A stretch of 64,000 nt of DNA from Chrysemys picta bellii (taxonomy: Eukaryota), in the NCBI RefSeq assembly GCF_011386835.1, contig NC_088808.1, forward strand, positions 24,366,001 through 24,430,000, given 5' to 3'. Below the pieces are notes generated by a model. The model was not told the DNA's origin, did no database searches, and saw nothing but the letters and a program-made list of their open reading frames with translations. Both the position numbers and the translations under genes were made by a program. Positions within the stretch are counted from its first letter, which is position 1. Every line of letters begins with the position of its first letter. Of this stretch, positions 21,901-60,853 are shown piece after piece.

Positions 21901-24867
21901 TGAGCTATGGAACCATCTGACCTTACAATCCAACATTCTCATTTGCTCAGTTCCAGGGATGCCAAGTAACAAGAATGGCATCCAGGGGGACAAGTCACCT
22001 AAAAAGTAACTTGGTATACTGGCAACTATAACTGGAAAACTCAAATAATTTGCTATTCATTTCTATCATGCTTATAAATACACGTAACAGCAGGATGTTA
22101 ATGAATTAATCTACTTAATTAATAGCAGAGCCCCTCTCTGAAATACATGCCAGTCCTGTGTTAAACCCAAATATGAAGTTGGGGGTAAGAAATAATGCTG
22201 CCATAAAATAGTTAATTCAGTCATTCCCAACACTTGTTCAGATAGAAAAGTGCATCTTGGAGGACTTCATGAACGATCTTATTTGGTGAGGAAGAGCAGC
22301 CCAAGTGACAGCTGCCACTCAGGAAGAATTCTGATCAATATAAAGGGATCAGCACATAGTTACTAATCAAATTATACAACATAGAATAGTTTATTGGCCT
22401 GCTGCCTAATTTAATTTTTACAGCGACAGAATCTTAACTACATAATATGGATACAAGATAGCTCAGAGGATTGGTAATGAGATACAAATCCTGGCATCTT
22501 TAGATGACAGACTAGAATCCAGCCCAGGTCTGATGGCTGTTCAGACCAATCTGAAATGATTTGGTGGGGCTTAGTCCAGCCCCCTAATGAAGAGAAGTCC
22601 CACATCACAGAAACCACCACAATTATCATCTTTTAACAGGTTGAGCAGTGAATGGGGAGAATGAACTTTGTCATCTCCACATGTGGTAAAGCAGTCACTA
22701 ATTAGTGATGGGTGCAAGCCTGTGGGTGGAAGACATAAGCCTCCCAGGCTATCAAGCACTTTACTCTGGGTTACACTGTGAAAAAAGATCTGCACAACTC
22801 CAACTGGTATTTTCTAAGATGCACAGACAAACTACAACTACTATTTCTCCTCCCAGTCAGAGGCCATCCTGCTCTCTCTCCCCCCTACACTTGTTGTAGG
22901 CTTCATTTTAAAAACATATTGTGTCAAGGAGCCTCCTTGCTTTCATCTTCTGAACAGGAACCTTAATAAAAGGAATAATCTGGGTTAGGTCCCAGTGTGG
23001 CTGGTGGCAGAGTTATTTTAAGCACATTTACATCCATTTGGCTCAATTAACTCACTTCAAAACACACTGTCCTACTTGAAAAATTATTTCAGAAATGGGA
23101 TGAGGCAATGGAACATTCTCCTTCTATATAAGGCTCTCTGTCCACTTCTGTCTGCAGCCCCTAATTAGGTAACTTAATTTGCTTCCAATGTTTCTATCAA
23201 CAATTCAATATAAACTATGAATTACAACCAACTGATACAAAAATTGAGATCAGATCTCACATAATCCCCTTTCATAAACTGCTAAAAATGACAGAATTGT
23301 TGGTGTTGCAATATGCAAAGCTAGTACCCGCAACTATAAATCAGGTTCTTTCAGATTTCAGGATCTGGTTAGAATTCCACAGGCAAAGAGATACCAATCT
23401 TAATCAAAGTTAAAGCATAATCTAGGGCTTGCTTTCATTTCCCAGGTTTGCTGCTTTCTTTTCTTTATCAGCCAAGTGGAGTTTTCAATTTTGCAAACTG
23501 TATCATATAAAGATGAGCAAAATAATTATTTATTGTAAACAGAAAGTGCGATGGATATTAGAACTCATGAAACTGGCCAGAAAAAGGCAAAGATTAAAAA
23601 AAGGAGAAATGGGTTAAGATAACATTTTGGGGAGCCAAGCATTTTTAGCTTTAAACAGATGTTATAAGGGAATTATGTAAATGAGTCATACCTAGGAACA
23701 TTAAGGAATACCTCAGAACAGATCAAAAATTATACTTTTAACACTTCTCCAATTATAGGTATTTTCAGTTGTGCACAGCTACTTAATCTCACCAAATTTA
23801 TATTCATGACTAAATTTACAAAGCACTTTGGGAAATGCATGTTTCACACTCAATTTTGAAAGATGAGACCCTCACCCCCTTTAAGGCTATAAAGGCAATA
23901 ATGCCCACACTGCAACCATGGACTGTGTGGTGTTAAAAGACATATGCAATATAAACTGTTGCTAAAGGAGAGATTTTCAACAGTACAAATGGTAGTTAGG
24001 CATCCTATACTTATGGAAAGTCAACTGTGAGTTAGCTAACTTTCTGCCAAGTGTTCCTTTGAAAATCCCCCTCAGAGTAACAGTAAATCTTCATAACAGG
24101 ATACACATTCTAATACATGCTTTTCTGAGCAAAGTAACAGCTAATAATATTGACTTTTAAAGTATCATCAGCGTCATCTGAGTAGGACCCAGTGAAAGGA
24201 ATGCTTCAGTTCACACATCAGAGCTATTGTTTCAGGCTTTCTGCAACCTCAGGCAGACATCACTGCTGGGATTACACTTTGGATGGGTTTACAGTTTTCT
24301 TTGCAACTACAAAAAAAAATGAACATTGAATCTCTGTCCGGCCTCCCCTTCACCAGCTTGTTCTCTGCACCCTCCCAGGGGCTCCCCCGGGACACTGCTA
24401 GAACAGACGCCGTGTCACACTCCAGACTAAGAGGCCGGACAGTTTTCTAGCCCCAGCAGCAGCACAGACCACAACGGCCTGGCGCGGATTCGATTCAGCG
24501 AGGCGGCGACATGCCGTGAAACCCCATTTCCTGCACGAGCTCTGCAGAGACAGGTGTTGTCAAACCGCCGCCCCGGAGCAGCCCCGCACATGGCTCGCTC
24601 CGCTCCCCGACCCTCCCCCGCAGCCCCCCGCAGCCTGGGCCCGGCGCCCCACTCCCCGGAAGCGGGGCCCTGCAGCCTGTGGGGCCGCCGGGCGCGGCGC
24701 CGGGCCCGGGGCTCCCCAGAAGGATATTGCCTCAGCAGCGCCTCCACCTCGGGAACCGGGTCCGGCTCGGCCGCCGCCGCCTCGTCCGGCTCCTCCACGA
24801 ACTTGTTCTCGTCGTACTCGTCGATGTCCAGGCGGCGGAAGCGCGAGGAGAGCGTGTTCCGGGCCAT
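15847..24867 (-). CDS. ARPC5L: Actin-related protein 2/3 complex subunit 5-like, 150 aa, complete
   Basis: complement(join(15847-15909,19011-19187,19896-19968,24728-24867)); [23 protein letters not shown]...[15 protein letters not shown]...[11 protein letters not shown]...[20 protein letters not shown]. Confidence 0.97.
16695..16885 (+). mobile_element. MIR/CORE-SINE-like element
   Basis: CTAGTGGTTAG...GATTCAATTCC...GACCTTGGGCAAAT...CCTCAGTTCCCCATCTGTA. Confidence 0.7.
19011..19187 (-). CDS. ARPC5L: ARPC5L coding exon 3
   Basis: ttgcag|GAA...AAG|gtatgt, 177 nt. Confidence 0.97.
19896..19968 (-). CDS. ARPC5L: ARPC5L coding exon 2
   Basis: ctgcac|A GGT GAT ATG...AAG|gtaaat, 73 nt. Confidence 0.95.
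19969..24727 (-). other. ARPC5L: U12-type (minor spliceosome) AT-AC intron, ARPC5L intron 1
   Basis: donor ATATCCTT; branch site TCCTTGAC (19983-19990) 12 nt before terminal AC; the join restores CAA GGT (Q-G). Confidence 0.93.
24728..24867 (-). CDS. ARPC5L: ARPC5L coding exon 1
   Basis: ATG at 24867; ends AGG CA|ATATCCTT (U12 donor), 140 nt. Confidence 0.95.
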
Positions 24868-25019
24868 GCCGGCGGAGAGGCCGCTTCGCTTCGCCTCGCA
24901 GCCTCGAGCGTCCGCGAGCCCCGCGCGCCGCTTCCGGGAAGGGGCGGAACCGGAAACCCCGCCCGCCCGTGGAGGAGCGGGAAGGGCGGAGGCGGAGCTT
25001 GGCTGTGAGGCGAGACTGG

Positions 25020-25272
25020 CAGGGCCTCGGAGAGGCGGGGCACAGCGGGCGTGGGGGAGGGGCAGGGACTCTGGGGAGGCGGGGCTGAGCGGACGGGGGG
25101 AGGGGCAGGGACTCTGGGGAGGCGGGGCACAGCGGGCGTGGGGGAGGGGCGCTGGGGAGGCGGGGCTGAGTGGACGTGGGGGAGGGGCAGGGACTCTGGG
25201 GAGGCGGGGCACAGCGGGCGTGGGGGAGGGGCGCTGGGGAGACGGGGCTGAGTGGACGCTGGGGAGGACTCG
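25020..25272. repeat. G-rich imperfect tandem repeat upstream of ARPC5L
   Basis: repeated GGGGAGGCGGGGCACAGCGGGCGTGGGGGAGGGGC(AGGGACTCT) and GGGGCTGAGTGGACG modules. Confidence 0.85.
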
Positions 25273-25742
25273 CCCCGCCAGCTCCACATTGGGGGGCCTG
25301 TCAGGGATGGGGCCCTAGGGGAGTTCTCAGTTTTGTGTTCCTGGAGGTTTCATTACTTGACAATCTTTAATTGAAGATTAATCTTTAATTGCTGGAAGCT
25401 CCAGGATGATCCTGGAGGGTTGGCAAGCCTACCAGAAGCAGGTGCTGTTTGCCCCACTCTGGGAGCTGTGTAGCCCCCAGCACCAGAGCCCTGCCTATAA
25501 ATACAGGCAACTGGGGCAAGCAGCTACCTGGCCCTGGGGCAGCCCGGAGCTAGGCCTCCCCACCGCTGCTGCAGTTGCAACTGGTAGAGAAGCGCCCAGA
25601 GGAGTGAGGTCAAGGCTTGGCTGGGTGCAGTGCATTGCACAGCCACAGTGAACTCCAGACCTTACCCTTCGTGTCATCAATGGAAGGAGAAGTTGGCTAA
25701 AAGCTGCTGTAAGGAGGTGAGTGCTGTCACTTTGTTCTAAAT

Positions 25743-26359
25743 CAGCAGTTCTCAACCAGGAGCCCGGGGGACCCATGAGCAGGTTTCAGGGGCTCCACCA
25801 AGCAGAGCTGGCATTGGACTCACTGGGGCCCAAGGGCAGAAAGATGAAGCCCCGCCACCAAGGGCTGAAGCCATAGGTGCTGACTTCCCCTGTTTCTTGT
25901 AGGTGCTCGACCCCGCCCCCCCTCCTCACCTTCCATGAGGACCCGCCCCCAAAGTCCCCATCCCAACTCTGACCCCTCCCTGCCACTATTCCAACTCTTT
26001 CCCCAAATCCCTGCCCTGGCCTCGCCTCTTCCCCCAAGCGCCATCCCCCCCAAGCGTGCTAACGCTGCCAAATAGCTGGGAAGCGCTGGGAGATAGGCAG
26101 AGGAGTGCGGAAGCAGCATGCTCAGCGGGGGAGGGGAGCTGGGCTGCCAGTGGATGCAGAGCACCCACAGAGTCGGTGTCTATGACTGAAGCCAAAGCCT
26201 GAGCAGCTTGGCATGGAGCCCCATGCCATTGCCCTGCTTGCTATCACTAATGTAGGCCTTGGCTTTTATATGCAGAAAAACAGTTGTGCACACGTGGGCT
26301 GTGGTGTTTTTAGATCATGTTGGCGGTAGGCTCAGAAAGAAAAAGGTTGCAAACCCCTA
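25743..26359. mobile_element. hAT-type non-autonomous DNA transposon
   Basis: TIRs CAGCAGTTCTCAACC / GGTTGCAAACCCCTA; 8-bp TSD TTCTAAAT/TTCTAAAC. Confidence 0.75.
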
Positions 26360-28206
26360 TTCTAAACCATAATAAATCTAGGACTAGGGTAGCCCAGCCC
26401 CTTACATACCAGGTCCACATACCCAATATTTTACTTGCATGACAAATTATTTTTACTCCCCCCCTCCTCTTAAAGTTACGATACTAGGTTCAACCATCTC
26501 ATGAACCAGCATTTCATATTCAGATGTGGAAGGAGGAGGTCTGATTTCCTACAGCTAGAATTATGCTGTTCCCCATTGCTTAGCTTCAGTTCCAGTAAAG
26601 CTTCTCCACATGCCTCCTTTCAGGCATTTCAGTTTGCTGCTTCTGCGTCCTGACGGAATTCTGTGCCAAAAAATAAAATCTGCAAATTTTATTTGTCAAT
26701 AAATAAATGTGAAGGCTCCAGCATGGCAATGGGGAGTACAGGCCACTGACTACAGAGGTGTGAGATCACCTTGTGCGCCCCCCCCCCCCGCCAATCTAGA
26801 TATAGACTCAGCGCTAAAGTTGCACCCAACCCAGACACAGCACAAGGACCAGGCCTGTCCCAGAAACACCCTGGGGCCCTGCCCCTCTATGCCAAGCATA
26901 CTAGATGTAGGCAGGCAGGTTCAGCCCAGCAGGATCCAAGTGTGAAGGGGCTTAGTGTGAGGAGATCCAGGTGTGGGGTGATAGGGTTCTGTGTGGGGCA
27001 ATCTGGGTGCAGGCAGCTTGGTGGGGGGAGGTGTGACAGGTTGGATCACAGAAACCCCCTTGGGAATGGCCAACTGATGTGCCAAGACTACTTCTGCCCC
27101 CTGCTTTCCTGCCCCGTCAGCTTAGGACTTCAGTGCCCTGCCTGGTTGGAGCCAGACCCGCTAGCCTGCTGCAAACCCAGACCCAGGGTCTGAACCACAT
27201 CCTCTAACAGCTGTAGGCTTAACTGAAAGCAACTTACAGAAATGTTCCTGTCTTTAACACTCAGATGTCCAACTTCCAATGGGGTCCAAACCCCAAATAA
27301 ATCCATTTTACCCTGTATAAAGCTTATACAGGGCAAACTCATAAATTGTTTGCCCTCTATAACACTGATAGAGAGATATGCACAGCTGTTTGCCCCCCCT
27401 GTATTAATACATACTCAGAGTTAATTAACAAATAAAAAGTGATTTTATTAAATACAGAAAGTAGGATTTAAATGGTTCCAAGTAATAGCAGACAGAACAA
27501 AGTGAATTACCAGGTGAAATGAAATAAAACACGCTAATCTAAGACTAATTCAGTAATATAACTGAGTACAGATAAAATCTCACCCTGAGAGATGTTTCAA
27601 TAAGTCTCTTTCACAGACTGGACACCTTCCTAGTCTGGGCACAGTCCTTTCCCCTGGTACAGCCCTTGTTCCAGCTCAAGTGGTAGCTAGGGGATTCCTC
27701 ATGATGGCTGCTCCCTTTGTTCTGTTCCACCCATTTGTATATCTTTTGCATAAGGCGGAAATCCTTTGTCCCTCTCTGGGTTTCCACCCCCTCCTTCTCA
27801 ATGGAAAAGCACCAGGTTAAAGATGGATTCCAGTTCAGGTGACATGATCACGTCACTGTAAGACTTCATTACCCACTTGCCAGCACACGTGTATACAGGC
27901 AGACTTACAAGTAAAACAGAACCATCTGCAGACAATTGTCCTGGTTAATGGGAGTCATCCAGATTCCAAACCACCATTAATGGCCCACACTTTGCATAAT
28001 TACAATAGGCCCTCAGAATTATATTTCATATTTCTAGTTTCATATACAAGAGTGATACATTTATACAAATAGGATGACCACACTCAACAGAAACTTTGTA
28101 ATGATACCTTACAAGAGACCTTTTGCATGAAGCATATTCTAGTTAAATCATATTTAAACTCATTAGCGTATTTTCATAAAATCATATAGAGTACAACATC
28201 ACAGGA

Positions 28207-28296
28207 TGCATCCGAAGAAGTGAGGTTTTTACTCACGAAAGCTTATGCCCAAATAAATCTGTTAGTCTTTAAGGTGCCACCAGACTCCTTGTTGTT
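28207..28296 (+). mobile_element. 90-bp Penelope-like element 3' terminus
   Basis: 12-bp TSD AACATCACAGGA (28195-28206, 28297-28308); tail GTTAGTCTTTAAGGTGCCAC related to the copies at 36693 and 60698. Confidence 0.85.
28208..28248 (+). ncRNA. Minimal hammerhead ribozyme motif (U4C core variant)
   Basis: GCAT CCGAAGA A GTGAG-GTTTTTA-CTCAC GAAA GC TT ATGC. Confidence 0.65.
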
Positions 28297-31200
28297 AACA
28301 TCACAGGAAGATCTGGATGAACAGGGGTGCAGACATAATGCGACTCTGCAGGGAAGTCCAGGTGAATGTGGTTGGGGCTCAGCTGGGGGGGTCTGGTTGT
28401 GGAATGCTCAGGAGGAGTCCAGGGGCTGGTTGGGTGGGGATCTGGGTGTGGTGAGCTAGTCAGGGTGGTGCAGGTGGGGTGAGGTTTGTTGGGGTGGGGG
28501 TTTGAGTGTGGGGGGTGGTCTCAGTGCAGGGCTGGGATCCAGATGCAGGGAGGTGGGGCTTGTTGTGGGGGTCTGGGTGCAGTGGGACTCCAGATGCAGA
28601 GAGTGAGGCATGTTAAGGTGTGTGTTCAGGTTCTGGGTGCAGCAGGTGAGGCTTGGTAGGGTGATCTGGCTATGAGGTGGGTCCAGATGCATGGGGGTTG
28701 GGAGGATGGGTGAGCAGCTCTCTGTACACTGGCCCCTTCCTCCCCACAGCTGAGGAGCAATAGGGGCAGGAAGAGGGGGGATGATGCAGAGCTTCCTGCA
28801 ATCAGAGAGGTTTCTGGGGGTGGGTCTGACCCAGCCCTGGCTGCTCCTTGCGGGGGAAGAGGAAGTCCTGTCCTCCCCAGCCCAGCCAGGACTAGCAGCC
28901 TAGCCTAGCATAGGCTAGGAGCCACTGGTTGGGGCAACCCCAGCTCCACCCCCAGTGATTTACCTCTCCAGTGGCTGCTCCTGGCATGCAAAACAATTTA
29001 CTCGCACTGCTGGGGAGCAGCGCATGACCATTCTTGCAACTTCCCCATCAGAAAGTCATTTTTCTGCAGAGAAGCAAAGAAAGCTGCAGGGGATATGAAT
29101 TCTGTGCACGTACAGTTGCGCAGAATTCTCCCAGGAGTATCAGTTCGTAAGAGGAGAATAAGATGTCTTTTGGAGCTATGAGGGAACAGTTAAGTTCATG
29201 TCAGTCTAAGGGATAACATTTATCAATGCAATCAAGATGAATTGTTTTTCCAACATTTTTTCATGCAAACTTTTTTTTTGTAATAGAAAAGGCATAGTTG
29301 GACACTGCAGGGAAATAAGAGCAGCTACCAGTCAGTACAATTTTAATCAAGATTTGAAAGCTGTGATTTTAATGCAACTACTGCACAATAAAAAAAGAAC
29401 CTGCTGTAAATGAAGTGTATCTACTAGATTAATGGATTGGTTAGTATGATACTACACATAAGTGCTAGGACAGCGCCCTGAATAATCACACCACCACTTC
29501 CTTCCACCAAGCTGAGTTTACAGAAATACTGTTAGAGTTGTGCACTACAAAATGTTGAGGGGTTGATCTAGGAGCAAAGTTCCATGGTTGAATGGCTGCT
29601 CCATACTAGTGGAGTGGATCCTTAAAAGGGAAAGATTGTCTAGTGATACCCAAGTGAACATATTTGTATTTCCAGCTCTATCAGATTTAGCACAACTTCA
29701 GTTGTCATTTAGTTTCTTTATGCCTGTTACAACCCCTTCCTCCATCTAAAAATGGGGATATTTCCCTACCTCAGAAAGGAGCTATAAAACTTGATTCATT
29801 AGTCATAGAAAAACACTTAAGTTCCTTGATAGAAAAAGGCAACCAAATATTTTGGTAGGATTAATCCTATTATGTGACAATAAGGGTTTGATACAGAGAA
29901 TGCCTTACTATCCCCAAATTAGTTTATAACAGGTCAGACTATTTGATTTATTCTCTATCCCAGCCATTAAACTAATGCATAGAACTACGTATTTCAGGAT
30001 TGCTTTTCCTCCATAATATAATATTCAATTGTAATTGACAGGGATGATAGCCTCTTTGTTTATAGTACTACACTTCACAAAGGTAGGAAGAGTTTATTTA
30101 AAATAAATAAGCACATTGTCACGTGTAACATTTTCTATTACTATATTGGATTTTCATCAAAGGTGTCCTTCAACCAGACACAAAAACAAGGTAAGTATTA
30201 TGAGGGGGAACAGCCACCACTGAAACAACATCAAAATACGCTATATAGCATGAGAGGGGAGTTAAAGGGTTTTTGATATTACGTAGGTAATCTGTACACT
30301 CAAAAGCATTAAAGACAGTAATTAAATACACAATGTAAGATAAAATGGAAGAATTGCTGCAAGAGGAGTTTTGAAGTAAATGAAGTGAATTATTTTAATC
30401 ACATAACAAGAATTAAATGAATTTCCAGTGTTCCACAATTACATTAGTAATTAGATTCACATTCTTGTAAAACAAAAATCCTCCTCCCCCTGCCAAATTA
30501 TTCCAGGTTCAAGACATGGATATTTCAGCTGTTGACTGAATAGAGCTCAAAAATGTCTGCAGAGAAGTGAGTGTGCTTCTCCTATTTCAGTTTATACCAT
30601 TTAAAAAAAAAAAAAAAAACCCCAAGGTCCAGATCCCAGTAAAAACTGCACCTGTTGGTCGCTGTACCAGCACTGAAGTCAATAGGAGGCCAATGAGTCT
30701 CTCTGCTCAGTGCTCTTTGCCAGATCTAGTCATAAATTAGTATCTTGCTCTTCATTTTACATGAAGTCAAAAAACAGAAAATTTAATAGGAAGCAGTTTA
30801 ACTTTTATTACATTTCCAGAAGCCAGAAAGTTTTATCCTATAAAAATAATTTATTGGATGTTCAAAACTACATTAAAAAACTAAAGTGCTTTATTGTTGA
30901 CTGGCTTCACCAGAATATTTTTGGAATGTTAAGAAAGTAGTTGAAGTGAAAGGGAAATCAGATTGCTAAATCCCAGTTAAATTGTTAACTAGAGTCATTA
31001 GAGATGCTATTAGTCTTTAGTATAGAAACTAAACAGAATAAAAATGCAACAGAACCCATTGGTGCTGCCTGGATGTGTTATGCAGACACAACGGCCACAG
31101 TGGTGATTTTTTTTTTTAAATCACTTATCCAAAAAATGGGCAGATTGTTTCAAGACACAAGTCTTGGATTCAGAAATGTTTTTACTTGCACTCAAGAATT

Positions 31201-35800: not shown

Positions 35801-38800
35801 AAGTGAGTTTAAAAAACTTACAGCTGCTACTGTGAGCATATCAAAGACTTTGGTACAGTATCTCCAGGCATTTGCATTTCCGTATTTGGTTTGGCACTCA
35901 TCTGTTAAATAGAGAAATCATTTTATTGTTTGACATTTCCCCCCCCACACCCAATTCTGTTAAGGAAAAAACCCTTAAATAATTACCCTAGAACTTGAAA
36001 TCTCAATAACTAGATGAGCAAAGAAATATGCTGGGCCACCAGTTAGGAACACTGACCGTAGTACAATGAGAGAGGATTTTTCTTATGGTCATCTGTCCAT
36101 TCCACTGGCAGTGGTTCTCTCATTTCTTGCATATTCAAGCAATATTTTGGCACAGGTTTCCTCCCATCTGAATGTGACTGAAGGTGCTGCCTCCATAAAA
36201 AGCATCTTCACGCCCTTCACAACTCAAATCTCAATTTAGTTCACCATGAACAAGTCCTTGGTTCAATTCTTGTGGTATGAAAATAAGTCAGATGCTACTA
36301 GGATGATTAAATAAGACAGATGCTTCTGAAAATGCTCTTACCAAAGGAGAGGAAGAGAGCTACAGTTGCTTTGTTTGGTTTAGAAAATCAACCTGGTCCA
36401 AATTATGCTATAGGAACTAATACTCCCATTAGGCCACTAAGGAAACTGAACAGACAAATCTTAGGGTTTTTTTTTAAATAAAGAAGTTATTTCCACGTTT
36501 GAGTTGCTGAAGATCGTACTGTGAGACACAAAGAAAAGCCCTCACAAATAGGCTCTGCTAGCTACTGCCCCTAAAGCAGTCACAGTGGCACAGCATGGCC
36601 CTATCTATACAGGCAGAACCAAACCATGCAATACATTTTTGGGTCAAAGAAGACAGAGCCTCAATGTAGTCGTAAGTAACTAGGTTCTAATAAAAGGCAA
36701 CAGAGGGTCCTGTGGCACCTTTAAGACTAACAGAAGTATTGGGAGCATAAGCTTTCGTGGGTAAGAACCTCACTTCTTCAGATGCAAGAAATGGAAATTT
36801 CCAAAGGCAGGTATAAATCAGTATGGAGATAACGAGGTTAGTTCAATCAGGGAGGGTGAGGTGCTCTGCTAGCAGTTGAGGTGTGAACACCAAGGGAGGA
36901 GAAACTGCTTCTGTAGTTGGCTAGCCATTCAGTCTTTGTTTAATCCTGATCTGATGGTGTCAAATTTGCAAATGAACTGGAGCTCAGCAGTTTCTCTTTG
37001 GAGTCTGGTCCTGAAGTTTTTTTGCTGTAAGATGGCTACCTTTACATCTGCTATTGTGTGGCCAGGGAGGGTGAAGTGTTCTACAGGTTTTTGTATATTG
37101 CCATTCCTGATATCTGACTTGTGTCCATTTATCCTCTTGCGTGTGACTGTCCAGTTTGGCCAATGTACATAGCCGAGGGGCACATGATGGCATATATAAC
37201 ATTGGTGGACATGCAGGTGAATGAGCCGGTGATGTTGTAGCTGATCTGGTTAGGTCCTGTGATGGTGTTGCTGGTGTAGATATGTGGGCAGAGTTGGCAT
37301 CGAGGTTTGTTGCATGAGTTGATTCCTGAGAAAACTACAATGCATTGGTGACCGCCCAGAAAACACCATCCTAGCCACCATGGATGTAGAGGCTCTCTAC
37401 ACAAACATCCCACACACAGATGGAATACAAGCTATCAGGAACAGTATCCCTGATGACGACACAGCACAACTTGTTGCTGAGCTCTGTTGCTTTTTACAGA
37501 TTCAGACTAACACGGCTACCCCTCTGATACTAGGTTCTAATAGATCTGGATAAGTCAGACCTAGCAAGCAAGGATTCCTTAGGCATAATAGATTAAGATA
37601 TCAAGATTTATACCCGTTTCTCCTCATTTCCAGAGGGATCCAAAATCAAGTCCATTTTTCATTACATATTTTTTGAGGCAACTATTAGATCCTTGAAAGA
37701 TTTCCTCAGGTCTTGTCATAACTTAATTGTAGTTCCAAAGCTTTCAGGCAAACCCACTCCCTCAGTTTATATTATTTGTGTTATTGACTAATACTAATCT
37801 TGTTTTCATTCACTAATATTGCCTCCTCTACTGCACCAGCAGTGACTTACCAGATAAGCCATCTTTGTTACCAAGTTGGTATAATTAGAATTAAAACCTA
37901 TTATGTCCTAAGCCATAAAGAGAATTCTCTATATTTTGTTTTTTTACAGCACTTTTCAGACAATCCCAAAACACTTCAAATATTAAACCTCAACTCCCAT
38001 ATTAAGCTCTTATCTGTGAAATTGGGATAAGGAAGTCTGAGGCATAGAGGTGAAGACCTATGGTCTTACTGCAAGTCAGTGACAGACCTGGAAATAGAAT
38101 TCTACCCAGTAGATTAGAACATAGTCCTTTTCAAGACTATAATTACTGTTCCCCATACTATGCTACATTACTTCACTATTTGACAGTGTATACATTCAGA
38201 TTGGCTTATTTCTCTGATGAATCCTATTTCACGATCCACTTGGGCTCTAGAAAAGCCATACACATTGTATTCAAAATCAAATTTACCAAAGAAAGGACAG
38301 AGAATCAGTTCACTGCATTTTTAGGTTAGTTAACCACAATTCAGAAACAGTTTATAAAGACTTACCATAAAATCCATATACTTGTGTTATCTGCCTGCTC
38401 TCATGATTCCCTCGCAAGAGTGTGATACGATCAGGCCATTTAGCTTTTAGTGCAAGAAGGTAGGTGAAAGTCTCAAGACTATAGTAACCTCGGTCTACAA
38501 AGTCACCCTGCAAATTAAAAATATTTTTACATAATAAATGGAAAAGTGGTTTCAGAAGTGCACACAGTAACATATCTATTTCTAATTCCTCAATTCGTAA
38601 AGAGGCCCAACACCACGAGGCATCGTAGCACCATTAAATATGTTTTCAGAATTCAAATAGTAAAAAACAAAAAACATTTAAATGGATATTTGAAATTTCA
38701 CATTTAAAACTGAAGCATTACTTCTGTGATTCTTATGTTCCCATTCATCCAAGAAACATTTCGGGGGGTCCTTTATTAGCCACTCAAATATTCTACTTCC

Positions 38801-41558
38801 CTTCTACTGCCAATGTAAGCTAGAGCTTTTAGATAGCAGGCTATAAAATGCATTTCCTTTCATGTGAACCAGCATTACCTATTTCAAATTTTAGGTAGAC
38901 AAAATAAAAGCCACACACATTAACCAAGTGAAAGAGTAAATTTGGGAGTGGAAAATATGTTTACAAGCAAGAGAGTTAAAATGGAAACTAAAACCAAAGA
39001 AGTCTGAAATTTGTTTTAAATCAACAGTGTAATTGTAGAAGTGCTTTCCTTACACCTTTTTTTGAATGACCAACTAACATCTAATATGTACATACCATAA
39101 ATATGTAGTTTGTGTCAGGAACCTGACCTCCAGTTCTGAACAGTTCACATAAGTCATAAAACTGCAAAAAAGAGTTTGTCCATATTAAGGGTTCTGTTAT
39201 CATTGTTAGTTAAGAGTGTGTTAGCACAAGTAATTGGAATTTATCTAGGTTTAGAGAGAAATAATCATTATTTTCAAGAACAAGATAAAAGTAGGTCTGA
39301 AAAAGTTCAGCTGAACAATTATGGCCTCAACGGACAGATTTCCCATTCATCCACTTGGTGTTCAAAAGCCACATGTAAACTGCTGAAATACTGATTAGGT
39401 CTTACTTCACCAGCGCAGCTTTACAGTGTGCAAGCCCGTCATATGCATAACGCCCATCGACTTCAAATGGAGTTCCCTCCTTCTAGGATGAGGCCCCTCT
39501 TTACATTGAGCAGCTCAACAACTGCAGTTTAAGTGAGTGAGGATAATTCAGCAATGCTTCTTAATCTGTGAGGCTGACTTCCCCAAAGCACACTCTGGGA
39601 AAGTTAAAAACAGTACGTTTTTCTTCCACTGCACAAAAGCAGCTCATACAAAATATTGCAAATTACTGAACATTCAGCAGATGGTTCTGCTTCCCCGAAC
39701 TATGCTTCCCCAACCATATATTTATATTCACCATTAAGCTTTATAGACATGTTTGCAAGTGACAGACTCTGCTTGCTCTCTAGGGGTATAACATGCAAGT
39801 ATTCATGCCGTTTTACCTGTCCATGTATATCTCCACAAACTGTAACTGGTGTAGATACTGGCTGCACATTTGACTCTTCCAGCAGTAGGTCACACACATA
39901 ATCACATAAGCGCTACAGAGAAAAAGTTTACACTGATCAGCCTGTGGGTTTTGTGCATTGTAATATCAAGTATTAACAGATTTATAAACTAATGAACTAA
40001 ATTATTTGCTTTAGGATTTATTCAGGTACCAAATTCTCTAGACATCAATGAGAAACCATGCTGACATGACTTGGGATGATAAACGTGTGAGAAAGTTTGG
40101 TTACATTTGAATTAATGTTTTAAAGCGCCACTACAGACTCATACAGTTTAACTATAGTCTCAATGAGGCTCAGAGCAACAGTTCACAGAATCAGTGTAAA
40201 TTATATTATTTAAATGCTACATTAAATTGCAGTTTTGCTCTAAAAAATTAAACAGATTACCTCTGTGGTTATTTCATGTTTATTGTATCAATGATTTCTA
40301 TATTAGATATGCTCAGTTTACAAGGAAAGGAGTTAATTTCCAACTACAAACCCTAAAAACTTATCCTGGAATGAAAGACTCAGACTGGATTCTGTCCTTC
40401 TCACTCATCAACAACTAAGGTCTCAGTTACACCTGTGCAACCCCATGTTCTTCACTGCAGGTACATAGATACAGTTCACTGGAACTTAGAAAACAATTCC
40501 ATTGATGATGTACAAGAAAAGAATAGAATCCTACTCACATACTCAGGCACATTGACTCCACTGAGTCATAGAAGCAGAGTACCACATTTATTGTTGCATG
40601 ACTCTCCATATACAATAGTTAATGGACCACTTCTCTTTTAATGGTCTCACAATGTGAGAGAACTACTTATGTTAAACAAGCTGTTCCAATTTCCTATTTA
40701 GCTGAGACACTCTGGGCTTGTACACACTACCACTTCTGTTGGTATAACTTATGTCACTCGGGGTATGAATTAGACTGTAAGTGGCAGTGTGGTTTTCTTA
40801 TGCCAGCTCTCCCACTGACATAGAGCGTCTTCACAATGGCACAGCTATGCCCCTGCGGTGATTCTCGTGTAGACTACGCTCTGAGTAGCTCTCCATAATG
40901 GAAAACGAGCTCAGTAACACAAAAGTTGGTCTCTTTCACCAAAGTTGGCCCAATAAGAGATATTAGCTTACACTAGCTTATCTCTCTAAGGTACAATAGT
41001 GTGAGGTCTGCAGCATTAGAAGAGGCCAGTCACTTTTCAGACTAGAACCACACAGACAAGGATATTTCTTCCAGCTTGTACCTAGTCAAAGCAATCTGCA
41101 GAATAGCCTGTGCTGCAGGTCTGGCACTGTGCACAAGGTTGCAGACAACGTCCCAGCCCTGAGGAGCTGACACTAGCAACATGCCGGGCTACCTTAGCAA
41201 CAACCCTGTTTCTAGAAGGGACCTCCGGGCAGGGCGCCTGACCGAACAGCCGCTCGCTGAGGCGGGGATCGCTCGCACCTGTCTCCGCTTCTCCCGGGCC
41301 AGGCCACTGCCGGCGCCAGGGGAGCGAGCACAGGCCGGGAACAGCGCTGCTGCCGCACCCCAGTGCGGCGGGGCCCCAGCGCCCGGAGCCCGGTCTGCGC
41401 TGGGCAGGGGCCAAGCCGCCCCCCGGGCTCTCTCCCGCTACCTTCCGCCCGCCCCGGCCCGGCCCCGCGCCGCCGCCCCTCACCTTGAGGTCGTTCTCGG
41501 GCAGGTACTTGCAGAGCCGCGCAATCTCAACGTACTTATCCAGGTCCAGAGGCGCCAT
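32570..41558 (-). CDS. PPP6C: Serine/threonine-protein phosphatase 6 catalytic subunit, 305 aa, complete
   Basis: complement(join(32570-32818,33858-34067,35822-35901,38366-38507,39096-39161,39817-39912,41484-41558)), 918 nt; GDIHG, GDFVDRG, RGNHE motifs; ends TTTPYFL*. Confidence 0.98.
33858..34067 (-). CDS. PPP6C: PPP6C exon 6
   Basis: ctcag|[15 protein letters not shown]...GAKVTNE|gtaaaa. Confidence 0.97.
34077..35660 (-). mobile_element. CR1 LINE (3' end at 34077) interrupted by a second CR1
   Basis: AGAATCATAGAA = reverse complement of the CR1 3' tail; antisense RT-coding remnants 35110-35660. Confidence 0.8.
34676..35108 (+). mobile_element. CR1 LINE 3' fragment nested in the opposite orientation
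   Basis: CTATAAAATCATGACCGG...GGTCTGACCCAGTATGGCTGTTCTTATG. Confidence 0.8.
35822..35901 (-). CDS. PPP6C: PPP6C exon 5
   Basis: aacag|[28 protein letters not shown]|gtaagt. Confidence 0.97.
36693..37528 (-). mobile_element. Truncated, internally inverted Penelope-like element in PPP6C intron 4
   Basis: GIY-YIG remnant on - ([28 protein letters not shown]; frameshifted); RT motif remnant on + ([12 protein letters not shown]); 14-bp TSD ACTAGGTTCTAATA (36679-36692, 37529-37542). Confidence 0.92.
36745..36785 (-). ncRNA. Minimal hammerhead ribozyme motif, canonical CUGANGA/GAAA core
   Basis: GCAT CTGAAGA A GTGAGGTTCTTACCCAC GAAA GC TT ATGC. Confidence 0.75.
37945..38110 (-). mobile_element. 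MIR-like SINE remnant
   Basis: GTCTGAGGCATAGAGGTGAAG...GCAAGTCAGTGACAGACCTGGAAATAGAA, antisense core. Confidence 0.5.
38366..38507 (-). CDS. PPP6C: PPP6C exon 4
   Basis: ttgcag|GDFVDRGYY...QVYGFY G|gtaagt. Confidence 0.97.
39096..39161 (-). CDS. PPP6C: PPP6C exon 3
   Basis: ttgcag|[22 protein letters not shown]|gtatgt. Confidence 0.97.
39817..39912 (-). CDS. PPP6C: PPP6C exon 2
   Basis: ctgtag|[10 protein letters not shown]...GDIHGQ|gtaaaa. Confidence 0.97.
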
Positions 41559-42300
41559 CTTAGCAGAGCAGCTGTGGGGGGCCGGCAACTTCCGGGGGCG
41601 GTAAAGCCCCTCTGCCGCGGCCACAAGCCGGAAACAAGGGGCACTTCCGGGGCGCCCCCTAAGTTCGGGGAGGAAGCCGGAACTCAGTCAGTCCGTTCTA
41701 CCCAGGGACAGGAAACGGAGGCGCCCCCCACAGACCTCCACCAGGGGGGTGCATCCGCCTCACCTCCCAGCGTGCTCTGCGTCAGCCCTTGGCGCGCTGC
41801 GCAATGCATGCTGGGAGCCATGGCTGCCCGGGCTGCGGTGCATGCTGGGCAGTGTAGTCTCTGTGGGGCCCTCCATATTCGAGGTGGGCAGCAAGGAGAG
41901 AGGCTTGACCCCGCCCCGCCCTGTGGAGCGAGGCTCGGGCCGGCGGGGCGGGGCGGGCTGGGCGGAGGGGAGCGAGGGCCCGGGCCGGGCGCTGTAGCCG
42001 GGGCAGCCCGCGAGGCGCGGTCACTTCTCCCAGCTCGCGGGTTCTCCGCCCCCCCGGGGGCAGCGGCGGTGAGCGGGGACGGCTGGGCCGGGGCCTGGCT
42101 GCGCTGTCCCCGGGGGCCGAACGGGCCGGGACTGGAGCCGGGCAGTGCCCAGCGGGTCGCCCGGTCCTCCAGCCCGCCGGCGCGGCCGCTCCTCCGCCTG
42201 GGCAGCGCCGGGCACCCGCGTGGGGCCGCGCGATCAGCGGCCTTGTGGAGACGATGGGACCGGTCCTGCCTGCGGGGGAGGGACTCCGGGGGGGGGATTT
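41200..42300. promoter_or_regulatory. Bidirectional CpG-island promoter of PPP6C/RABEPK
   Basis: divergent genes; CCGGAAGT ETS sites on - near 41587-41594 and 41643-41650; ZNF143/Staf-type sites at 41800-41816 and 41835-41859 (-). Confidence 0.85.
41484..41558 (-). CDS. PPP6C: PPP6C exon 1
   Basis: [25 protein letters not shown]|gtgagg. Confidence 0.97.
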
Positions 42301-42545
42301 CCCCGCAGGCGCTGGGGTGGGGGCTCGGGGGGGGGATTTCCCCACAGGCACTGGAGGGGTTTGGGGGGCTCGGGGGGGATTTCCCCACAGGTGTTGGGAG
42401 GGTTTGGGGGGGTTCCCCGCAGGCACTGGGGGGAATTTCCCCACAGGCGCTGGAGGGGTTTGGGGGTCTCGGGTGGGGATGTGCCCACAGGCACTGGAGG
42501 GGTTTGGGGGGCCTGCAGGGAGAGAGACTCTAGGGGGATTTCCAT
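42290..42545. repeat. Imperfect tandem repeat of about 40 bp in RABEPK 5' UTR intron
   Basis: units GGGGGGATTTCCCCACAGGCACTGGAGGGGTTTGGGGGGCTC, about 6 copies. Confidence 0.88.
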
Positions 42546-42578
42546 GACTCTGGCTTTGCCTTCCTCTGCTCAAGATTC

Positions 42579-42637
42579 ATGAGGCCGAAGCTGCTGCCGG
42601 TTCTGGAGCCTGGAGCTGTCCCCCAAAGGGCCACATG
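42579..42637 (+). CDS. RABEPK: RABEPK first coding exon
   Basis: ctcaag|ATTC ATG; MRPKLLPVLEPGAVPQRAT TG|gtcagt. Confidence 0.9.
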
Positions 42638-45600
42638 GTCAGTGCACCCCAACATTCCCCATCCATCCTCAGTCCCCCCACCATGGCTATCATGTGTTAG
42701 AGTGGCATCAAATTCCCCTATTAAAGCCCAATAAAGCACCAGTTTCTTTGATGACTATATGGGGTTCATATTAGAATGTGGGGGGTGTTTTTTACATTCT
42801 TCCCATCAATAAATTGACACAATCTTTTCACTTAATCTGTATTCTAAACTTTCACTTTTCCCCTCATTTCACTGTTCCAGGAGTGGTTTACACCCTTCTT
42901 CTCTGGCACAGCACTTCCCCATTGAAGGCACTACAAATATCCCTGTCCTTCCCTCCCCAAACCTTTGTGTGCACGCCAGGCCTGATTCATGCCTATATTT
43001 CCCTATTCTAGGTACACACTTGTTCCCCTTGGAGAAAGCCCTAGTGCACGCGTTGGCCATAACTGCTTATATTTGCCTCCAGTCCCAACCGCTGGGAAAG
43101 GCAAAGTGGTCATCGTCGGGGGAGCAGACCCCAATGGCAGCTTCTCCGATGCCCACATCATAGATCTGGGTAAGAACAGGAAGTGTTTAGCAGTTTTGTT
43201 GCCTGTTACACTGTCTGTCCTTGGAAACCAAAAGTCTGTTCAATCTTCGCTGTACTTGGGGAGATCAGGCCAGATCCATGCAAAAACCTCAATGGGACAG
43301 TAAAAACTGTGATGATAAGGCCTAGAAACAGTGAGACAGCTTCTTACAGCAGGTGTACACTACAAATTTACATCAGCACAGCTGCACCGTGTCTGGTGAA
43401 GATGCTCAGCCTAAGCCAATGGGGGCAGCTCTCCCATCAGCTTAATAACTTCACCTCTGCGAGAGGTGGTAGCTGTGTCGGCAGGAAAAGCTCGCCCACT
43501 GACGTAGCACTGTCTACACCCGAGGCGACGGTCAGCATAACAACGTTGCTGTAGGGTGTGGATTTTTCATACCCCTGAGCGATGTAGTTCTATTAAAGTA
43601 AGGATGTAGTGTAGACCAAGCCTTAGTCTTGAGTGTTACAATCTGTCCAGATGGATGAAGGACCCAATCCTGCAGCCACATAGGTCTGAATATGGCTGTG
43701 GATGTCATTGAAAGATCAGAGCCTAGAAGGAAATAGGGTTTCAAGTTTCTTTATATTCTGGACTTGAATCTCATGTCTGTGTCCTGAGGTATGGACATCC
43801 ATGGTCATTTTGTTGGGGGTTGGGAGAGGTGAGCTAAGAAAGATATTGGGTGATCTGTCATATGCGTCTGTGCTGGAGTGCGTTTATGGGGACGCTTTCA
43901 AGTATTAGACTCCACGCTCTTGTCAAAATTAGAATATGGGCTAACATCAAGGGGCAGTGTTGACAGACTAAAGTAGCTCATCTCAGTTGAATTATTTTGT
44001 CTTATATTGAAAGGACTAACTGCCCTGAGACTTACCCCTTGAGGAGGTGGCCATCAGCCATCTATCTATGTCTGATTGTCCTCAAGTAGCATTTGTATTT
44101 AGCTGAAATTTGTTCATGGATTACACTATGCCTCAGTCAGCCTAAGGTAACTGTAGCAGTACTGGAAACACCAGTCTTGTTGCAAATGGAACTCTGCACT
44201 TACTCCCTCCATTGCAGATAGACACCAGTGGGCAATGCCTGGTTGGGTGGGCCTGTTGCCTCGATATGAACATGCCACCTTCATTCCCACAAGCAGCCCC
44301 ACTAGCCTCTGGGTGTTTGGAGGGGCTGACCAGTCTGGAAATAGAAACTGTGTTCAAGTGCTGAATCTAGGTAAGTGTGTGGTAGAATCTACCTATCCCA
44401 GCCTTCTCTTTCTTTGTCGGACAATTGGATATGCACCTGTTATCCATGTGAGAAACTGTTTGAATTACTTTGTTAGATTTGTAAAGTACAGGTTACAACT
44501 TCAAAAGCTGTATTTACAGGAAAACGATTTCCTTTATCTCCTCCTAGGAGCGTTAAAGACTAGGTAGAATCAAATCTACGACTTTCTAAAATGCTGTGGT
44601 GACTTTTGCAGTGTGACCCTCAGGTTCCTTGCCGCAGGGAATGCACTGTACACTAGTGCTTCACAGCAACGAATCCCATGCTTGGCATTAACAGGAGCAT
44701 TTTTGTGCCCAATGAGTGGGTCCTAACAGAGCCGTATCAGCCCACCATGCAGTTCAATGTGTGTGGGCCATTTGATGGTCTGCTCTGTATGGATATTAAA
44801 GATTCTTAAGAAACTAGGCGTTTGCCCTGGAGTTGTTAACCAAAAATTACTCTCCCTTCTCTGTTGTCTTATGTGCCTGTTTTTTACCTGTCTGTTGTCC
44901 TCCACTACACAGGTGACAGCATTTCAGTGGTGCTGCATATATATTGCTTGTAAAGAGCGTTTTTTAAAAGTCTCAACTTATGTAATGACAGATTCCCTGT
45001 AAAAATCTCTAGGTGTGGAATAAATACAGGAGTTTTGTAGCATTAGTGGGAAATCCTGGGAACCATGTTTGATTTCAGCATACAAATACATTCCACAAAA
45101 TCCTATGTGGCTAATGTAGAATGGACATAGCACTTTGTCAGGTGGTGTAAACAAACCTGAATTAGAAACATGAAGCTGACCAACCTTTCACTTGCAACTT
45201 GGATTTTTCACTCATTTCCCAAAAGTCATTTTTTGCCACTTTTGACGTTTTTTTTTTTCCTGACACTGTTTTGTGTGTTTAATAACTCCCTAGTCAAGTC
45301 AATCTCAGCTCTGAAGAATTCATATAAATAAGGTAACTTCTTGTTATTTATTTGTGAATAATTATCATTTCATCTTTTAATTAGAAACAGGAATCTGGGA
45401 AAGTCCTAAAGTGACTGGGACTCAACCACTCCCTAGGACATTCCACACGTCATCAGCGGCTATAGGAGACCGGCTTTATGTTCTTGGAGGGGGAGATAAA
45501 GGAGCAGAGCCCGTTAAAGATCCACAACTTCACGTGTTTGACACAGGTACCTCTAAATAACTAATATTTTGTTACACTGAGTTAAATGATTCATTGTCAA

Positions 45601-52085: not shown

Positions 52086-56543
<4,458 letters not shown>

Positions 56544-56557
56544 GCTGAACCGGGGAC

Positions 56558-56649
56558 CTGCGGAGCCAAGCGAGAGGAGAGCGGCTCAGCCCCGCCGCGC
56601 CAGCGGCCGGGCCCCCAGCCCCACGCCCTAGGCCGCACGCCACACTCAC
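56558..56649 (-). other. HSPA5: Probable 92-nt intron in the HSPA5 5' UTR
   Basis: donor ACGG|GTGAGT at 56649; acceptor CTCCGCAG|G at 56558, 14 nt before ATG; TATA box upstream. Confidence 0.7.
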
Positions 56650-56724
56650 CGTCACCGCGCCTCGCACGCACCCGCTCCGCTCGCTACTGCCGCCGCTATG
56701 CCCAGGCCGCCCCGGCCGCCTACC

Positions 56725-56732
56725 CTTATATA
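56725..56732 (-). promoter_or_regulatory. HSPA5: HSPA5 TATA box (TATATAAG)
   Basis: cttatata on +, 17 nt downstream of ERSE1. Confidence 0.85.
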
Positions 56733-56748
56733 CCCTCCCTCACGGCTT

Positions 56749-56767
56749 CGTGGAGGCCAACTATTGG
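56749..56767 (-). promoter_or_regulatory. HSPA5: ERSE1 (CCAAT-N9-CCACG)
   Basis: CCAAT AGTTGGCCT CCACG, exact consensus for NF-Y plus ATF6/XBP1. Confidence 0.95.
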
Positions 56768-56780
56768 CTGCGGAACCCGC

Positions 56781-56799
56781 GCTGGAACCTTTCCATTGG
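56781..56799 (-). promoter_or_regulatory. HSPA5: ERSE2-like
   Basis: CCAAT GGAAAGGTT CCAGC. Confidence 0.8.
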
Positions 56800-56813
56800 T
56801 TGGCACCGACTAA

Positions 56814-56832
56814 GCTGGCCACTGTTGATTGG
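56814..56832 (-). promoter_or_regulatory. HSPA5: ERSE3-like
   Basis: CCAAT CAACAGTGG CCAGC. Confidence 0.8.
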
Positions 56833-56853
56833 CGGAGATCAAGCTCTCCGCAG

Positions 56854-56861
56854 TGACGTGT
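56854..56861 (+). promoter_or_regulatory. HSPA5: ATF/CRE-like site upstream of the ERSEs
   Basis: TGACGTGT; further CCAAT boxes near 56889, 56915 and 56954. Confidence 0.6.
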
Positions 56862-57155
56862 GGCGTCGCACCCCTCCGTCATCGTTCCATTGGCCCGTTT
56901 TACCCGTGTCGCGGACCAATCAGCTTCGAAGGGACAGCCAAGCGGAGTGAGCCCATTGGCTGGGAGCAGTCGTCACGTTGCAGGAAGAGAGAGGCGGTGC
57001 TGGTCCATTCTGGAAGTTTCTATGGTTACCAGCCCCTGGGGAGGGAGTCGGGAACGGGGGAAATGGGGGCGAGGGGTTGCCAGGAGAGACCAAGGAGCGA
57101 ACGGCCCCGGGGTCACAGCTCCTGTCCCCACTGCCACACGGGGCCTGGGGCTCTG

Positions 57156-57605
57156 TGACGCTCCCCCCACAGGGGCCTCGATGGGCCAGAGGACATGGTG
57201 ACGTCCCACCGAGGGGTCACGGCGGGCCTGGAGACTGTGTGACCTCCCCACATGGCAGCCTCAACGGAGCAGGGGATGGCCTGACGCTCCCCACACAGGG
57301 GCCTCGATGGGCCAGAGGACATGGTGATGTCCCACTGAGGGGTCACGGCGGGCCTGGAGACTGTGTGACCTCCCCACATGGCAGCCTCAGTGGAGCAGGG
57401 AACGGCCTGACGCTCCCCACACAGGGGCCTCGATGGGCCAGAGGACATGGTGACGTCCCACTGAGGGGTCACGGCGGGCCTGGAGACTGTGTGACCTCCC
57501 CACATGGCAGCTTCAGTGGAGCAGGGAACGGCCTGACGCTCCCCACACAGGGGCCTCAATGGGCCAGAGGACGGCGTGATGTCCCACATCGAGGCCACGA
57601 CTGGT
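57156..57605. repeat. 126-bp minisatellite, about 3.6 copies
   Basis: unit starts TGACGCTCCCC at 57156, 57282, 57408, 57534. Confidence 0.95.
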
Positions 57606-60697: not shown

Positions 60698-60853
60698 TTT
60701 CAGAGTAGCAGCCGTGTTAGTCTGTATCCGCAAAAAGAACAGGAGTACTTGTGGCACCTTAGAGACTAACAAATTTATTAGAGCATAAGCTTTCGTGGAC
60801 TACAGCCACGGGACTAATAAATTTGTTAGTCTCTAAGGTGCCACAAGTACTCC
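60698..60853. mobile_element. Penelope-like terminus arranged as a fold-back
   Basis: 12-bp TSD TATTATTACTAG; 41-bp perfect inverted repeat 60741-60781 / 60814-60854. Confidence 0.88.

What the first reader, a model, noticed from the sequence alone, without database searches (positions are those of the whole stretch)
36745..36785. Intact hammerhead core in sense orientation within the PPP6C pre-mRNA
Seen: CUGAAGA...GAAA core with helix I GCAU/AUGC on the same (-) strand as PPP6C, in intron 4; predicted cut after GCUU (between 36749 and 36748). Established: such minimal hammerheads are weak as monomers and activated by dimerisation through the AGCU palindrome. Inference: nascent transcripts could self- or trans-cleave, affecting splicing or output of PP6. 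Helix II has one mismatch or bulge.
Basis: partly seen in the sequence, partly recalled or inferred. Interest (0 to 1): 0.7.

Follow-up and report, generated by a model that had tools for sequence, protein, structure and literature searches.

The report
Dead Penelope retroelement hammerhead in intron
The motif is a real minimal hammerhead-ribozyme sequence, but it is the inherited tail of a broken Penelope-like retrotransposon in PPP6C intron 4, a known and abundant kind of repeat that very probably neither cuts the pre-mRNA nor affects the gene.

Summary
Window 36745-36785 (- strand) carries a complete minimal type-I hammerhead. It lies sense to PPP6C in intron 4, and the predicted cut falls between 36749 and 36748. 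A full descriptor finds it once in the window and never in 300 shuffles.

It is not a gene-specific element. It sits in the 3' region of an 836-bp, 5'-truncated Penelope-like element (PLE) at 36693-37528. That insertion has a perfect 14-bp target-site duplication, broken GIY-YIG endonuclease remnants and an inverted tail fragment at its 5' end. PLE minimal hammerheads were described in 2014, in turtles among others.

Cleavage looks very unlikely:
- The copy is solo, and helix III can form only between two molecules.
- Predicted dimer Kd is about 20 mM.
- Helix I pairing probability falls to 0.04 or less in intron context.
- One helix II pair is broken (A·C).
- Published solo PLE motifs show no detectable cleavage, and slow intronic hammerhead cleavage does not block splicing.

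This scan already holds 182 notes on Penelope hammerheads in this genome. The earlier follow-ups returned here called them known and dead. The finding is ordinary and of low interest.

The parts
36745..36785 (-). Minimal type-I hammerhead motif: helix I 4 bp, canonical core, helix II 5 bp with a bulge or A·C mismatch, no helix III, AGCU palindrome.
36748..36749 (-). Predicted scissile bond, 3' of U17, between 36749 and 36748.
   Evidence: Standard hammerhead numbering applied to the sequence. No experimental or RNA-seq support was obtained.
36693..36744 (-). Post-hammerhead 3' region of the PLE, short form. It ends inside the loop of the stem-loop that the optional 'tail' would close.
   Evidence: About 85% identical to the same region of copy B over the shared ~95 bp. 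The conserved GTTAGTCT..AAGGTGCCAC block occurs 4 times in the window.
36786..37413 (-). PLE 3' UTR and broken C-terminal ORF. It holds the CxxC linker and GIY..YIG motifs (ORF piece 37132-37413) and the rest of the endonuclease (36932-37183), interrupted by a frameshift and small deletions.
   Evidence: the best hit is named GIY-YIG domain-containing protein, Chrysemys picta, 75% identity, E 1e-17; 84% mean column identity to the ENA contig L001 of the same family.
37380..37528 (+). Inverted 5' fragment of the composite insertion. It has a short RT-like piece ([11 protein letters not shown]..) joined to the terminal 47 nt of the PLE 3' end (37482-37528), including the optional ~32-nt tail.
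   Evidence: (inverted repeat I3, direct repeat D5). The RT assignment is an inference from the motif; Pfam gave no hit.
36679..36692 (.). Target-site duplication, copy 1 (ACTAGGTTCTAATA).
   Evidence: family D2, 100% identical 14-mers 850 bp apart.
37529..37542 (.). Target-site duplication, copy 2.
   Evidence: family D2.
38366..38507 (-). PPP6C exon 4 (GDFVDRG...GNHES...QVYGFY), with AG/GT splice sites.
35822..35901 (-). PPP6C exon 5 ([16 protein letters not shown]...), with AG/GT splice sites.

Best explanation
The 41-nt motif is the minimal hammerhead that Penelope-like retrotransposons (PLEs) carry downstream of their RT-endonuclease ORF. A 5'-truncated PLE copy was inserted by target-primed reverse transcription into PPP6C intron 4, in the sense orientation. 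The result is an 836-bp composite: an inverted tail fragment, then endonuclease remnants, hammerhead and 3' region, all bounded by a 14-bp target-site duplication.

The copy was dead on arrival and has since decayed. Its ORF carries a frameshift and deletions, and one helix II pair is now A·C.

In the PPP6C pre-mRNA it is a passive passenger. The monomer cannot form helix III, there is no second copy in cis, intermolecular dimerisation is far too weak at cellular RNA concentrations, and flanking intron sequence competes with helix I. It is therefore spliced out and degraded with the intron, without measurable self-cleavage or effect on PP6.

Shown: the motif, its PLE context, the gene context and the absence of a partner. 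Inferred: the lack of cleavage in vivo.
For: PLE context:
- TSD and inverted tail fragment.
- GIY-YIG remnants and a same-family contig, L001.
- Other copies in the window are truncated at different points, each with its own TSD: B at 28207-28296 and C near 60.7-60.86 kb.
- The architecture matches published PLE insertions: 5' truncation, an adjacent inverted copy, and a 30-40 bp tail at one end only (PMC8557442, PMC11167929).

Motif features match the published min-HHR consensus, described for turtles and snakes among others (PMC4209133): the extra nucleotide after A9, the G10.1-C11.1 pair, palindromic 15.2-16.2, short helix I and long helix II.

Inactivity:
- Single motifs give no detectable cleavage, and dimers cleave weakly (PMC4209133, PMC6765202).
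- The Anolis PLE hammerhead was protein-dependent and no RNA-seq ends were found at its site (PMC11167929).
- Computed any-dimer dG is -2.35 kcal/mol, Kd about 20 mM.
- Helix I pair probability is 0.04 or less with 50-nt flanks or more, and about 0.01 with 100 nt or more.
- In 141-nt context the MFE sequesters the core and the 3' strand of helix I, z = -0.04.
- No other sense-strand copy lies in the gene.
Against: - The catalytic core and H17 are fully canonical, and helix II still forms 5 bp, so the RNA is not formally disabled.
- Nearest-neighbour thermodynamics ignore tertiary contacts, chaperones and the PLE protein, which stimulated an Anolis hammerhead.
- Thousands of other PLE-hammerhead RNAs sharing the AGCU palindrome could act as trans partners.
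Absence of cleavage in vivo is therefore inferred, not shown.
Confidence: 0.87

Rival explanations
1. One reading: the sense-strand hammerhead self-cleaves or trans-cleaves nascent PPP6C transcripts after dimerising, and this changes splicing or PP6 output.
For: Canonical core, sense orientation, and a palindrome available for dimerisation. Domesticated intronic hammerheads exist in amniotes, in RECK, CTCL and DTNB (PMC6155905).
Against: - The copy is solo, with no cis partner.
- Predicted Kd is about 20 mM.
- Helix I is lost in context, and helix II carries a mismatch.
- Single PLE motifs are inactive in vitro (PMC4209133).
- Cleavage by a slower hammerhead inside an intron leaves splicing efficiency unchanged; only a fast ribozyme aborts it (PMC2995048).
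- It does not match any Rfam hammerhead model.
- By the scan's unchecked notes, similar sense copies lie in other genes' introns.
Confidence: 0.03
2. Low-level cleavage does occur in vivo, helped by PLE-encoded protein, chaperones or heterodimers with other PLE RNAs, but it has no consequence for PPP6C because the intron is discarded anyway.
For: Protein-assisted cleavage of the Anolis PLE hammerhead (PMC11167929). Weak dimer activity (PMC4209133). Intact core.
Against: The same thermodynamic and context arguments apply. The Anolis study saw no RNA-seq ends at its site. It is not known whether any PLE protein is expressed in this species.
Confidence: 0.08
3. The PLE fragment has been co-opted for something other than cleavage, such as an intronic promoter, a splicing element or a protein-binding site.
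For: PLE terminal repeats can contain promoters (PMC6765202). The fragment makes up a third of intron 4.
Against: Nothing in the sequence suggests constraint. The ORF is decayed, CpG o/e is 0.21, a helix II pair is broken and the fold z-score is unremarkable. No conservation data are available.
Confidence: 0.02

Closest known systems
Minimal hammerhead ribozymes (min-HHR) of Penelope-like elements (Cervera & de la Pena 2014, PMC4209133; Lunse, Weinberg & Breaker 2017, cited in PMC6765202)
   Same: - Type-I topology with a 4-bp helix I and a canonical CUGANGA...GAAA core.
- An extra unpaired nucleotide after A9 and a G10.1-C11.1 pair.
- A long helix II, no helix III, and a palindromic AGCU that forms helix III only in a dimer.
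- Located downstream of the RT/GIY-YIG ORF of a PLE.
- Reported in turtles and snakes.
   Different: Nothing of kind. This copy is solo, sits in a truncated dead insertion and has one broken helix II pair. Activity of this particular sequence is untested.
Poseidon PLE of Anolis carolinensis (PAc), with its hammerhead and 'tail' (PMC11167929)
   Same: - A PLE hammerhead that cleaves only with PLE protein in vitro, with no RNA-seq ends at its site.
- An optional 30-40 bp tail set by two reverse-transcription start sites.

Here the main copy ends at the short form and the inverted fragment carries the long form.
   Different: A different PLE family and host. In PAc the hammerhead overlaps the ORF start in the pLTR. 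Here only the 3' copy downstream of the endonuclease is present.
Conserved intronic hammerheads of amniotes: HH9 and HH10 in RECK, CTCL and DTNB (de la Pena & Garcia-Robles 2010, summarised in PMC6155905)
   Same: Type-I hammerhead, sense strand, inside an intron of a protein-coding gene. Thought to derive from retroelement hammerheads.
   Different: Those have canonical helices with loop-loop tertiary contacts and are conserved at orthologous positions across many species. This motif lacks helix III and tertiary loops, matches no Rfam hammerhead model, and is a recent-looking repeat copy still flanked by its TSD.

Membership tests
PLE minimal hammerhead (min-HHR) | Conserved core CUGANGA ... 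GAAA with H17 before helix I | tested here: met
   sequence. Descriptor hit: 1 in the window, 0 in 300 shuffles.
PLE minimal hammerhead (min-HHR) | [quoted passage not shown] | tested here: met
   An A follows CUGAAGA, and helix II starts with G and ends with C before GAAA.
PLE minimal hammerhead (min-HHR) | No helix III; palindromic 15.1-16.1 (AGCU) that allows helix III only in a dimer | tested here: met
   AGCU follows GAA directly. Only 2 nt lie between A15.1 and U16.1, so a monomer hairpin is impossible.
PLE minimal hammerhead (min-HHR) | Short helix I (4-5 bp) and extended helix II (6-8 bp) | tested here: inconclusive
   Helix I is 4 bp (GCAU/AUGC). Helix II is only 5 bp with a bulged A or A·C mismatch. 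Relatives have a perfect 5 bp (copy B) or 6 bp (L001), with A-U against G-C at the position broken here.
PLE minimal hammerhead (min-HHR) | Located in the terminal repeat or 3' region of a Penelope-like element | tested here: met
   GIY-YIG remnants lie about 145 nt upstream. TSD and inverted tail fragment are present.
PLE minimal hammerhead (min-HHR) | Self-cleavage as a dimer | not testable with these tools
   Only thermodynamic estimates were possible.
Penelope-like element insertion | GIY-YIG endonuclease C-terminal to the RT | tested here: met
   the hit is named GIY-YIG domain-containing protein (Chrysemys picta), E 1e-17. GIY/YIG motifs are visible in the ORF 37132-37413. Pfam itself gave no hit on the short pieces.
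Penelope-like element insertion | Reverse transcriptase domain | tested here: inconclusive
   Only a ~34-aa RT-like piece lies on the + strand at 37380-37481. There is no Pfam hit. The copy is 5'-truncated, so the RT is not expected.
Penelope-like element insertion | 5' truncation, adjacent inverted 5'-truncated copy, optional 30-40 bp tail at one end, TSD | tested here: met
   D2 14-bp TSD, I3 inverted arms; tail motif at 37503-37520 only. Matches the descriptions in PMC8557442 and PMC11167929.
Rfam hammerhead families (Hammerhead_1, HH9, HH10 and others) | Match to the covariance model | tested here: not met
   No hit at gathering score in the window. No hammerhead hit at E up to 10 in 36600-36950.
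Domesticated intronic hammerheads of amniotes | Conservation at the orthologous intron across species | not testable with these tools
   No related vertebrate genomes are available in the collections. Metagenome and viral scans were blank.

The most novel reading that the evidence does not exclude
Solo, sense-oriented PLE hammerheads with canonical cores, like this one, are cleaved in vivo with the help of PLE protein or heterodimers with other PLE RNAs. They would then create a class of ribozyme-generated breaks in the introns of housekeeping genes of this reptile, PPP6C among them.
Probability: 0.03. Interest if true: 0.5.

Novelty: already known. Interest (0 to 1): 0.1.

Why it matters
It matters little for this locus. 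The report shows that a ribozyme-looking motif in a conserved phosphatase gene is an ordinary retrotransposon relic. That guards against over-reading the many similar motifs in this genome.

One general question stays open in the field: whether PLE minimal hammerheads cleave at all in vivo, and whether intronic sense copies are selected against. It needs genome-wide and RNA-end data, not this single copy.

Tried and rejected
- **Rfam.** The whole window at gathering score and the local region at E up to 10 gave no hammerhead family. This is expected for motifs without helix III.
- **First pattern search.** A fixed-spacing pattern missed the motif through my own spacing error. It was corrected.
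- **Pfam.** No hits on the three short ORF pieces. The word-based protein search was needed to name the GIY-YIG domain.
- **Ancestral core state.** I tried to collect more family copies, to decide whether the ancestral core was CUGA or the U4-to-C form CCGA. The latter could turn into CUGA by CpG decay.
  - P0001 is not on record.
  - P0002 gave one 532-bp contig.
  - Two metagenome scans and one viral scan were blank.
  - The supplement of PMC4209133 is not held, and Lunse et al. is not held.
  - With two CUGA copies (this one and L001) and one CCGA copy (B), the question stays open.
- **Chance motif.** Rejected.
- **Joined coding sequence.** Exons were located one by one, with short motif searches in a local six-frame translation.

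Full report
**Observation**

On the - strand, window 36745-36785 reads as follows:
- helix I 5' strand GCAU;
- core CUGAAGA;
- one unpaired A;
- helix II, GUGAGG / 6-nt loop / CCCAC;
- GAAA, with its last A starting the palindrome AGCU;
- U17;
- helix I 3' strand AUGC.

Every invariant hammerhead position is canonical.

Helix II forms G-C, U-A and G-C, then either an A·C mismatch or a bulged A followed by two G-C pairs. The isolated 41-mer folds into helices I and II at -9.6 kcal/mol, with an unremarkable z of -1.56.

A full minimal-hammerhead descriptor finds exactly this site in the 64-kb window. It required a 4-bp helix I, the core, a helix II closed by G-C, GAAA, palindromic 15.2/16.2, U16.1 and H17. 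It found nothing in 300 dinucleotide shuffles. The simpler core pattern alone is expected 0.10 times.

**Gene context**

PPP6C exon peptides were located one by one in a local six-frame translation. All exons are on the - strand:

| Exon | Coordinates | Note |
|---|---|---|
| 1 | from the ATG at 41558 | |
| 2 | ends 39817 | GDIHGQ |
| 3 | about 39161-39096 | |
| 4 | 38507-38366 | |
| 5 | 35901-35822 | |
| 6 | about 34060-33900 | |
| 7 | ends with the stop after 32573 | |

The motif is therefore sense to PPP6C, inside intron 4 (38365-35902, 2464 nt).

**What it is**

The motif is not free-standing. A perfect 14-bp direct repeat, ACTAGGTTCTAATA, lies at 36679-36692 and 37529-37542 and brackets an 836-bp insertion at 36693-37528.

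Reading the - strand upstream of the motif gives two ORF pieces:
- 37132-37413 holds a CxxC linker and the GIY and YIG motifs.
- 36932-37183 holds the remainder of the endonuclease.

A frameshift separates the two pieces. Pfam does not score such short pieces. The word-based protein search gives a best hit named GIY-YIG domain-containing protein from the turtle Chrysemys picta, at 75% identity and E 1e-17. A second hit lies on an ENA contig, L001, which is the same element family at 84% mean column identity. Its own CUGAAGA core sits in the same place. Relative to L001, the window copy has several small deletions, including frame-breaking ones.

At the 5' end of the insertion, the + strand carries a short RT-like piece at 37380-37481. 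It is joined to the last 47 nt of the element's 3' end at 37482-37528. This 3' end includes a ~32-nt extension that the main copy lacks.

This is the published architecture of Penelope-like element (PLE) insertions. It combines strong 5' truncation, an adjacent inverted truncated copy, a 30-40 bp 'tail' at only one end, and a hammerhead in the terminal region (PMC8557442). The tail is set by two alternative reverse-transcription start sites in a stem-loop (PMC11167929). GTTAGTCT in the post-hammerhead region and AGACTAAC in the tail can form such a stem (D5, 28).

**Other copies in the window**

- Copy B (28207-28296, + strand) is a 90-bp insertion made only of hammerhead plus 3' region. It has its own 12-bp TSD, AACATCACAGGA. 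Its core has U4 changed to C, and its helix II is a perfect 5 bp.
- Locus C (about 60700-60852) is a head-to-head pair of a sister family. Its hammerhead is cut off inside helix II, and it has an ATTATTACTAG duplication.

At the helix II position that is A·C in the finding, copy B has A-U and L001 has G-C. That is a covariation between relatives, and it shows the finding's copy has lost a pair.

**Comparison with the literature**

Cervera and de la Pena (PMC4209133) described these minimal hammerheads in the terminal repeats of all PLEs examined. They reported thousands of mostly solo, truncated copies per genome, in turtles and snakes among others. [quoted passage not shown]

Rfam has no model that captures the motif. 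There was no hit at gathering score, and no hammerhead hit at E up to 10. It is therefore not a member of the canonical type-I or HH9/HH10 families found conserved in amniote introns (PMC6155905).

**How it most likely behaves**

A monomer cannot make helix III, because only two nucleotides separate A15.1 from U16.1. Activity needs a second motif. Several results argue against cleavage here:
- There is no other sense-strand copy anywhere in the PPP6C transcription unit. Copy B is on the other strand and 4.3 kb beyond the stop codon, and locus C is 19 kb upstream of the gene.
- The partition-function estimate for any homodimer is -2.35 kcal/mol relative to two monomers. That is a Kd near 20 mM, and about 1e-4 of strands would be dimeric even at 1 µM.
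- In natural flanking sequence, the pairing probability of the 4-bp helix I falls from 0.95-0.99 in isolation to about 0.17 (20-nt flanks), 0.04 (50 nt) and 0.01 or less (100-400 nt).
- In the 141-nt MFE, upstream UUCUU pairs with the AAGAA of the core, and a small hairpin occupies AGC..GCU. The z-score is -0.04.

Published results agree:
- A single PLE motif gave no detectable cleavage. Dimers and trimers cleaved weakly, mostly at non-physiological Mg2+ (PMC4209133, PMC6765202).
- The Anolis PLE hammerhead cleaved only when the PLE protein was added. No RNA-seq reads began or ended at its site (PMC11167929).
- Even if some cleavage occurred, an intron cut co-transcriptionally by a hammerhead is spliced as efficiently as an intact one. 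Only a fast ribozyme aborts processing (PMC2995048, summarising Dye et al. 2006 and Fong et al. 2009).

The best-supported account is a passive, decaying retrotransposon relic that is removed with the intron.

**What could not be done**

The lack of cleavage in vivo is an inference.

I also could not gather enough family copies to decide whether CUGA is ancestral here or arose from a CCGA (U4-to-C) master by CpG decay. There are two CUGA copies (this one and L001) and one CCGA copy (B). The database scans were blank.

**Earlier notes of this scan**

The index holds 182 notes on Penelope hammerheads in this genome. The earlier follow-ups returned here judged them known and dead, and one noted a U4-to-C lineage. 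Other notes report sense copies in introns of GRB2, RAB11FIP3 and an RSPH3-like gene. Those notes are unchecked. Copy B in this window does confirm that U4-to-C copies transposed, since its TSD is intact.

**Verdict**

The identification as a minimal hammerhead is correct. The proposed effect on PPP6C is unsupported and improbable. The feature is an already-known kind and of low interest.

Noticed in passing
window 28207-28296 (+): A 90-bp PLE insertion made only of the hammerhead plus the 3' region, flanked by a 12-bp TSD (AACATCACAGGA at 28195-28206 and 28297-28308). Its core reads CCGAAGA (U4 to C) while helix II is a perfect 5 bp. It lies 4.3 kb beyond the PPP6C stop codon, on the opposite strand.
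   Followed up: partly
window about 60700-60852: A head-to-head pair of a sister PLE family, flanked by an ATTATTACTAG duplication. The - strand arm starts inside hammerhead helix II and carries the long tail. The + strand arm holds only the post-hammerhead block.
   Followed up: partly
L001:1-532: An ENA metagenome-assembly contig (ERZ27277084) is a reptile-type PLE fragment, presumably host DNA in a metagenome. It ends in a perfect fold-back centred on the hammerhead helix II loop. This is either a palindromic head-to-head insertion or an assembly artefact.
   Followed up: no
window 36712-36731 with 37503-37520, and 60707-60770: GTTAGTCT in the post-hammerhead region and AGACTAAC in the optional tail are complementary. 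They would close a stem-loop at the PLE 3' end. Short-form copies end inside its loop, which fits the two reverse-transcription start sites reported for an Anolis PLE.
   Followed up: partly
window 24001-26000, 40001-44000, 56001-58000: GC-rich blocks (0.53-0.63 GC) that look like CpG islands. The middle one covers PPP6C exon 1 and its promoter. The others probably mark neighbouring genes' promoters.
   Followed up: no
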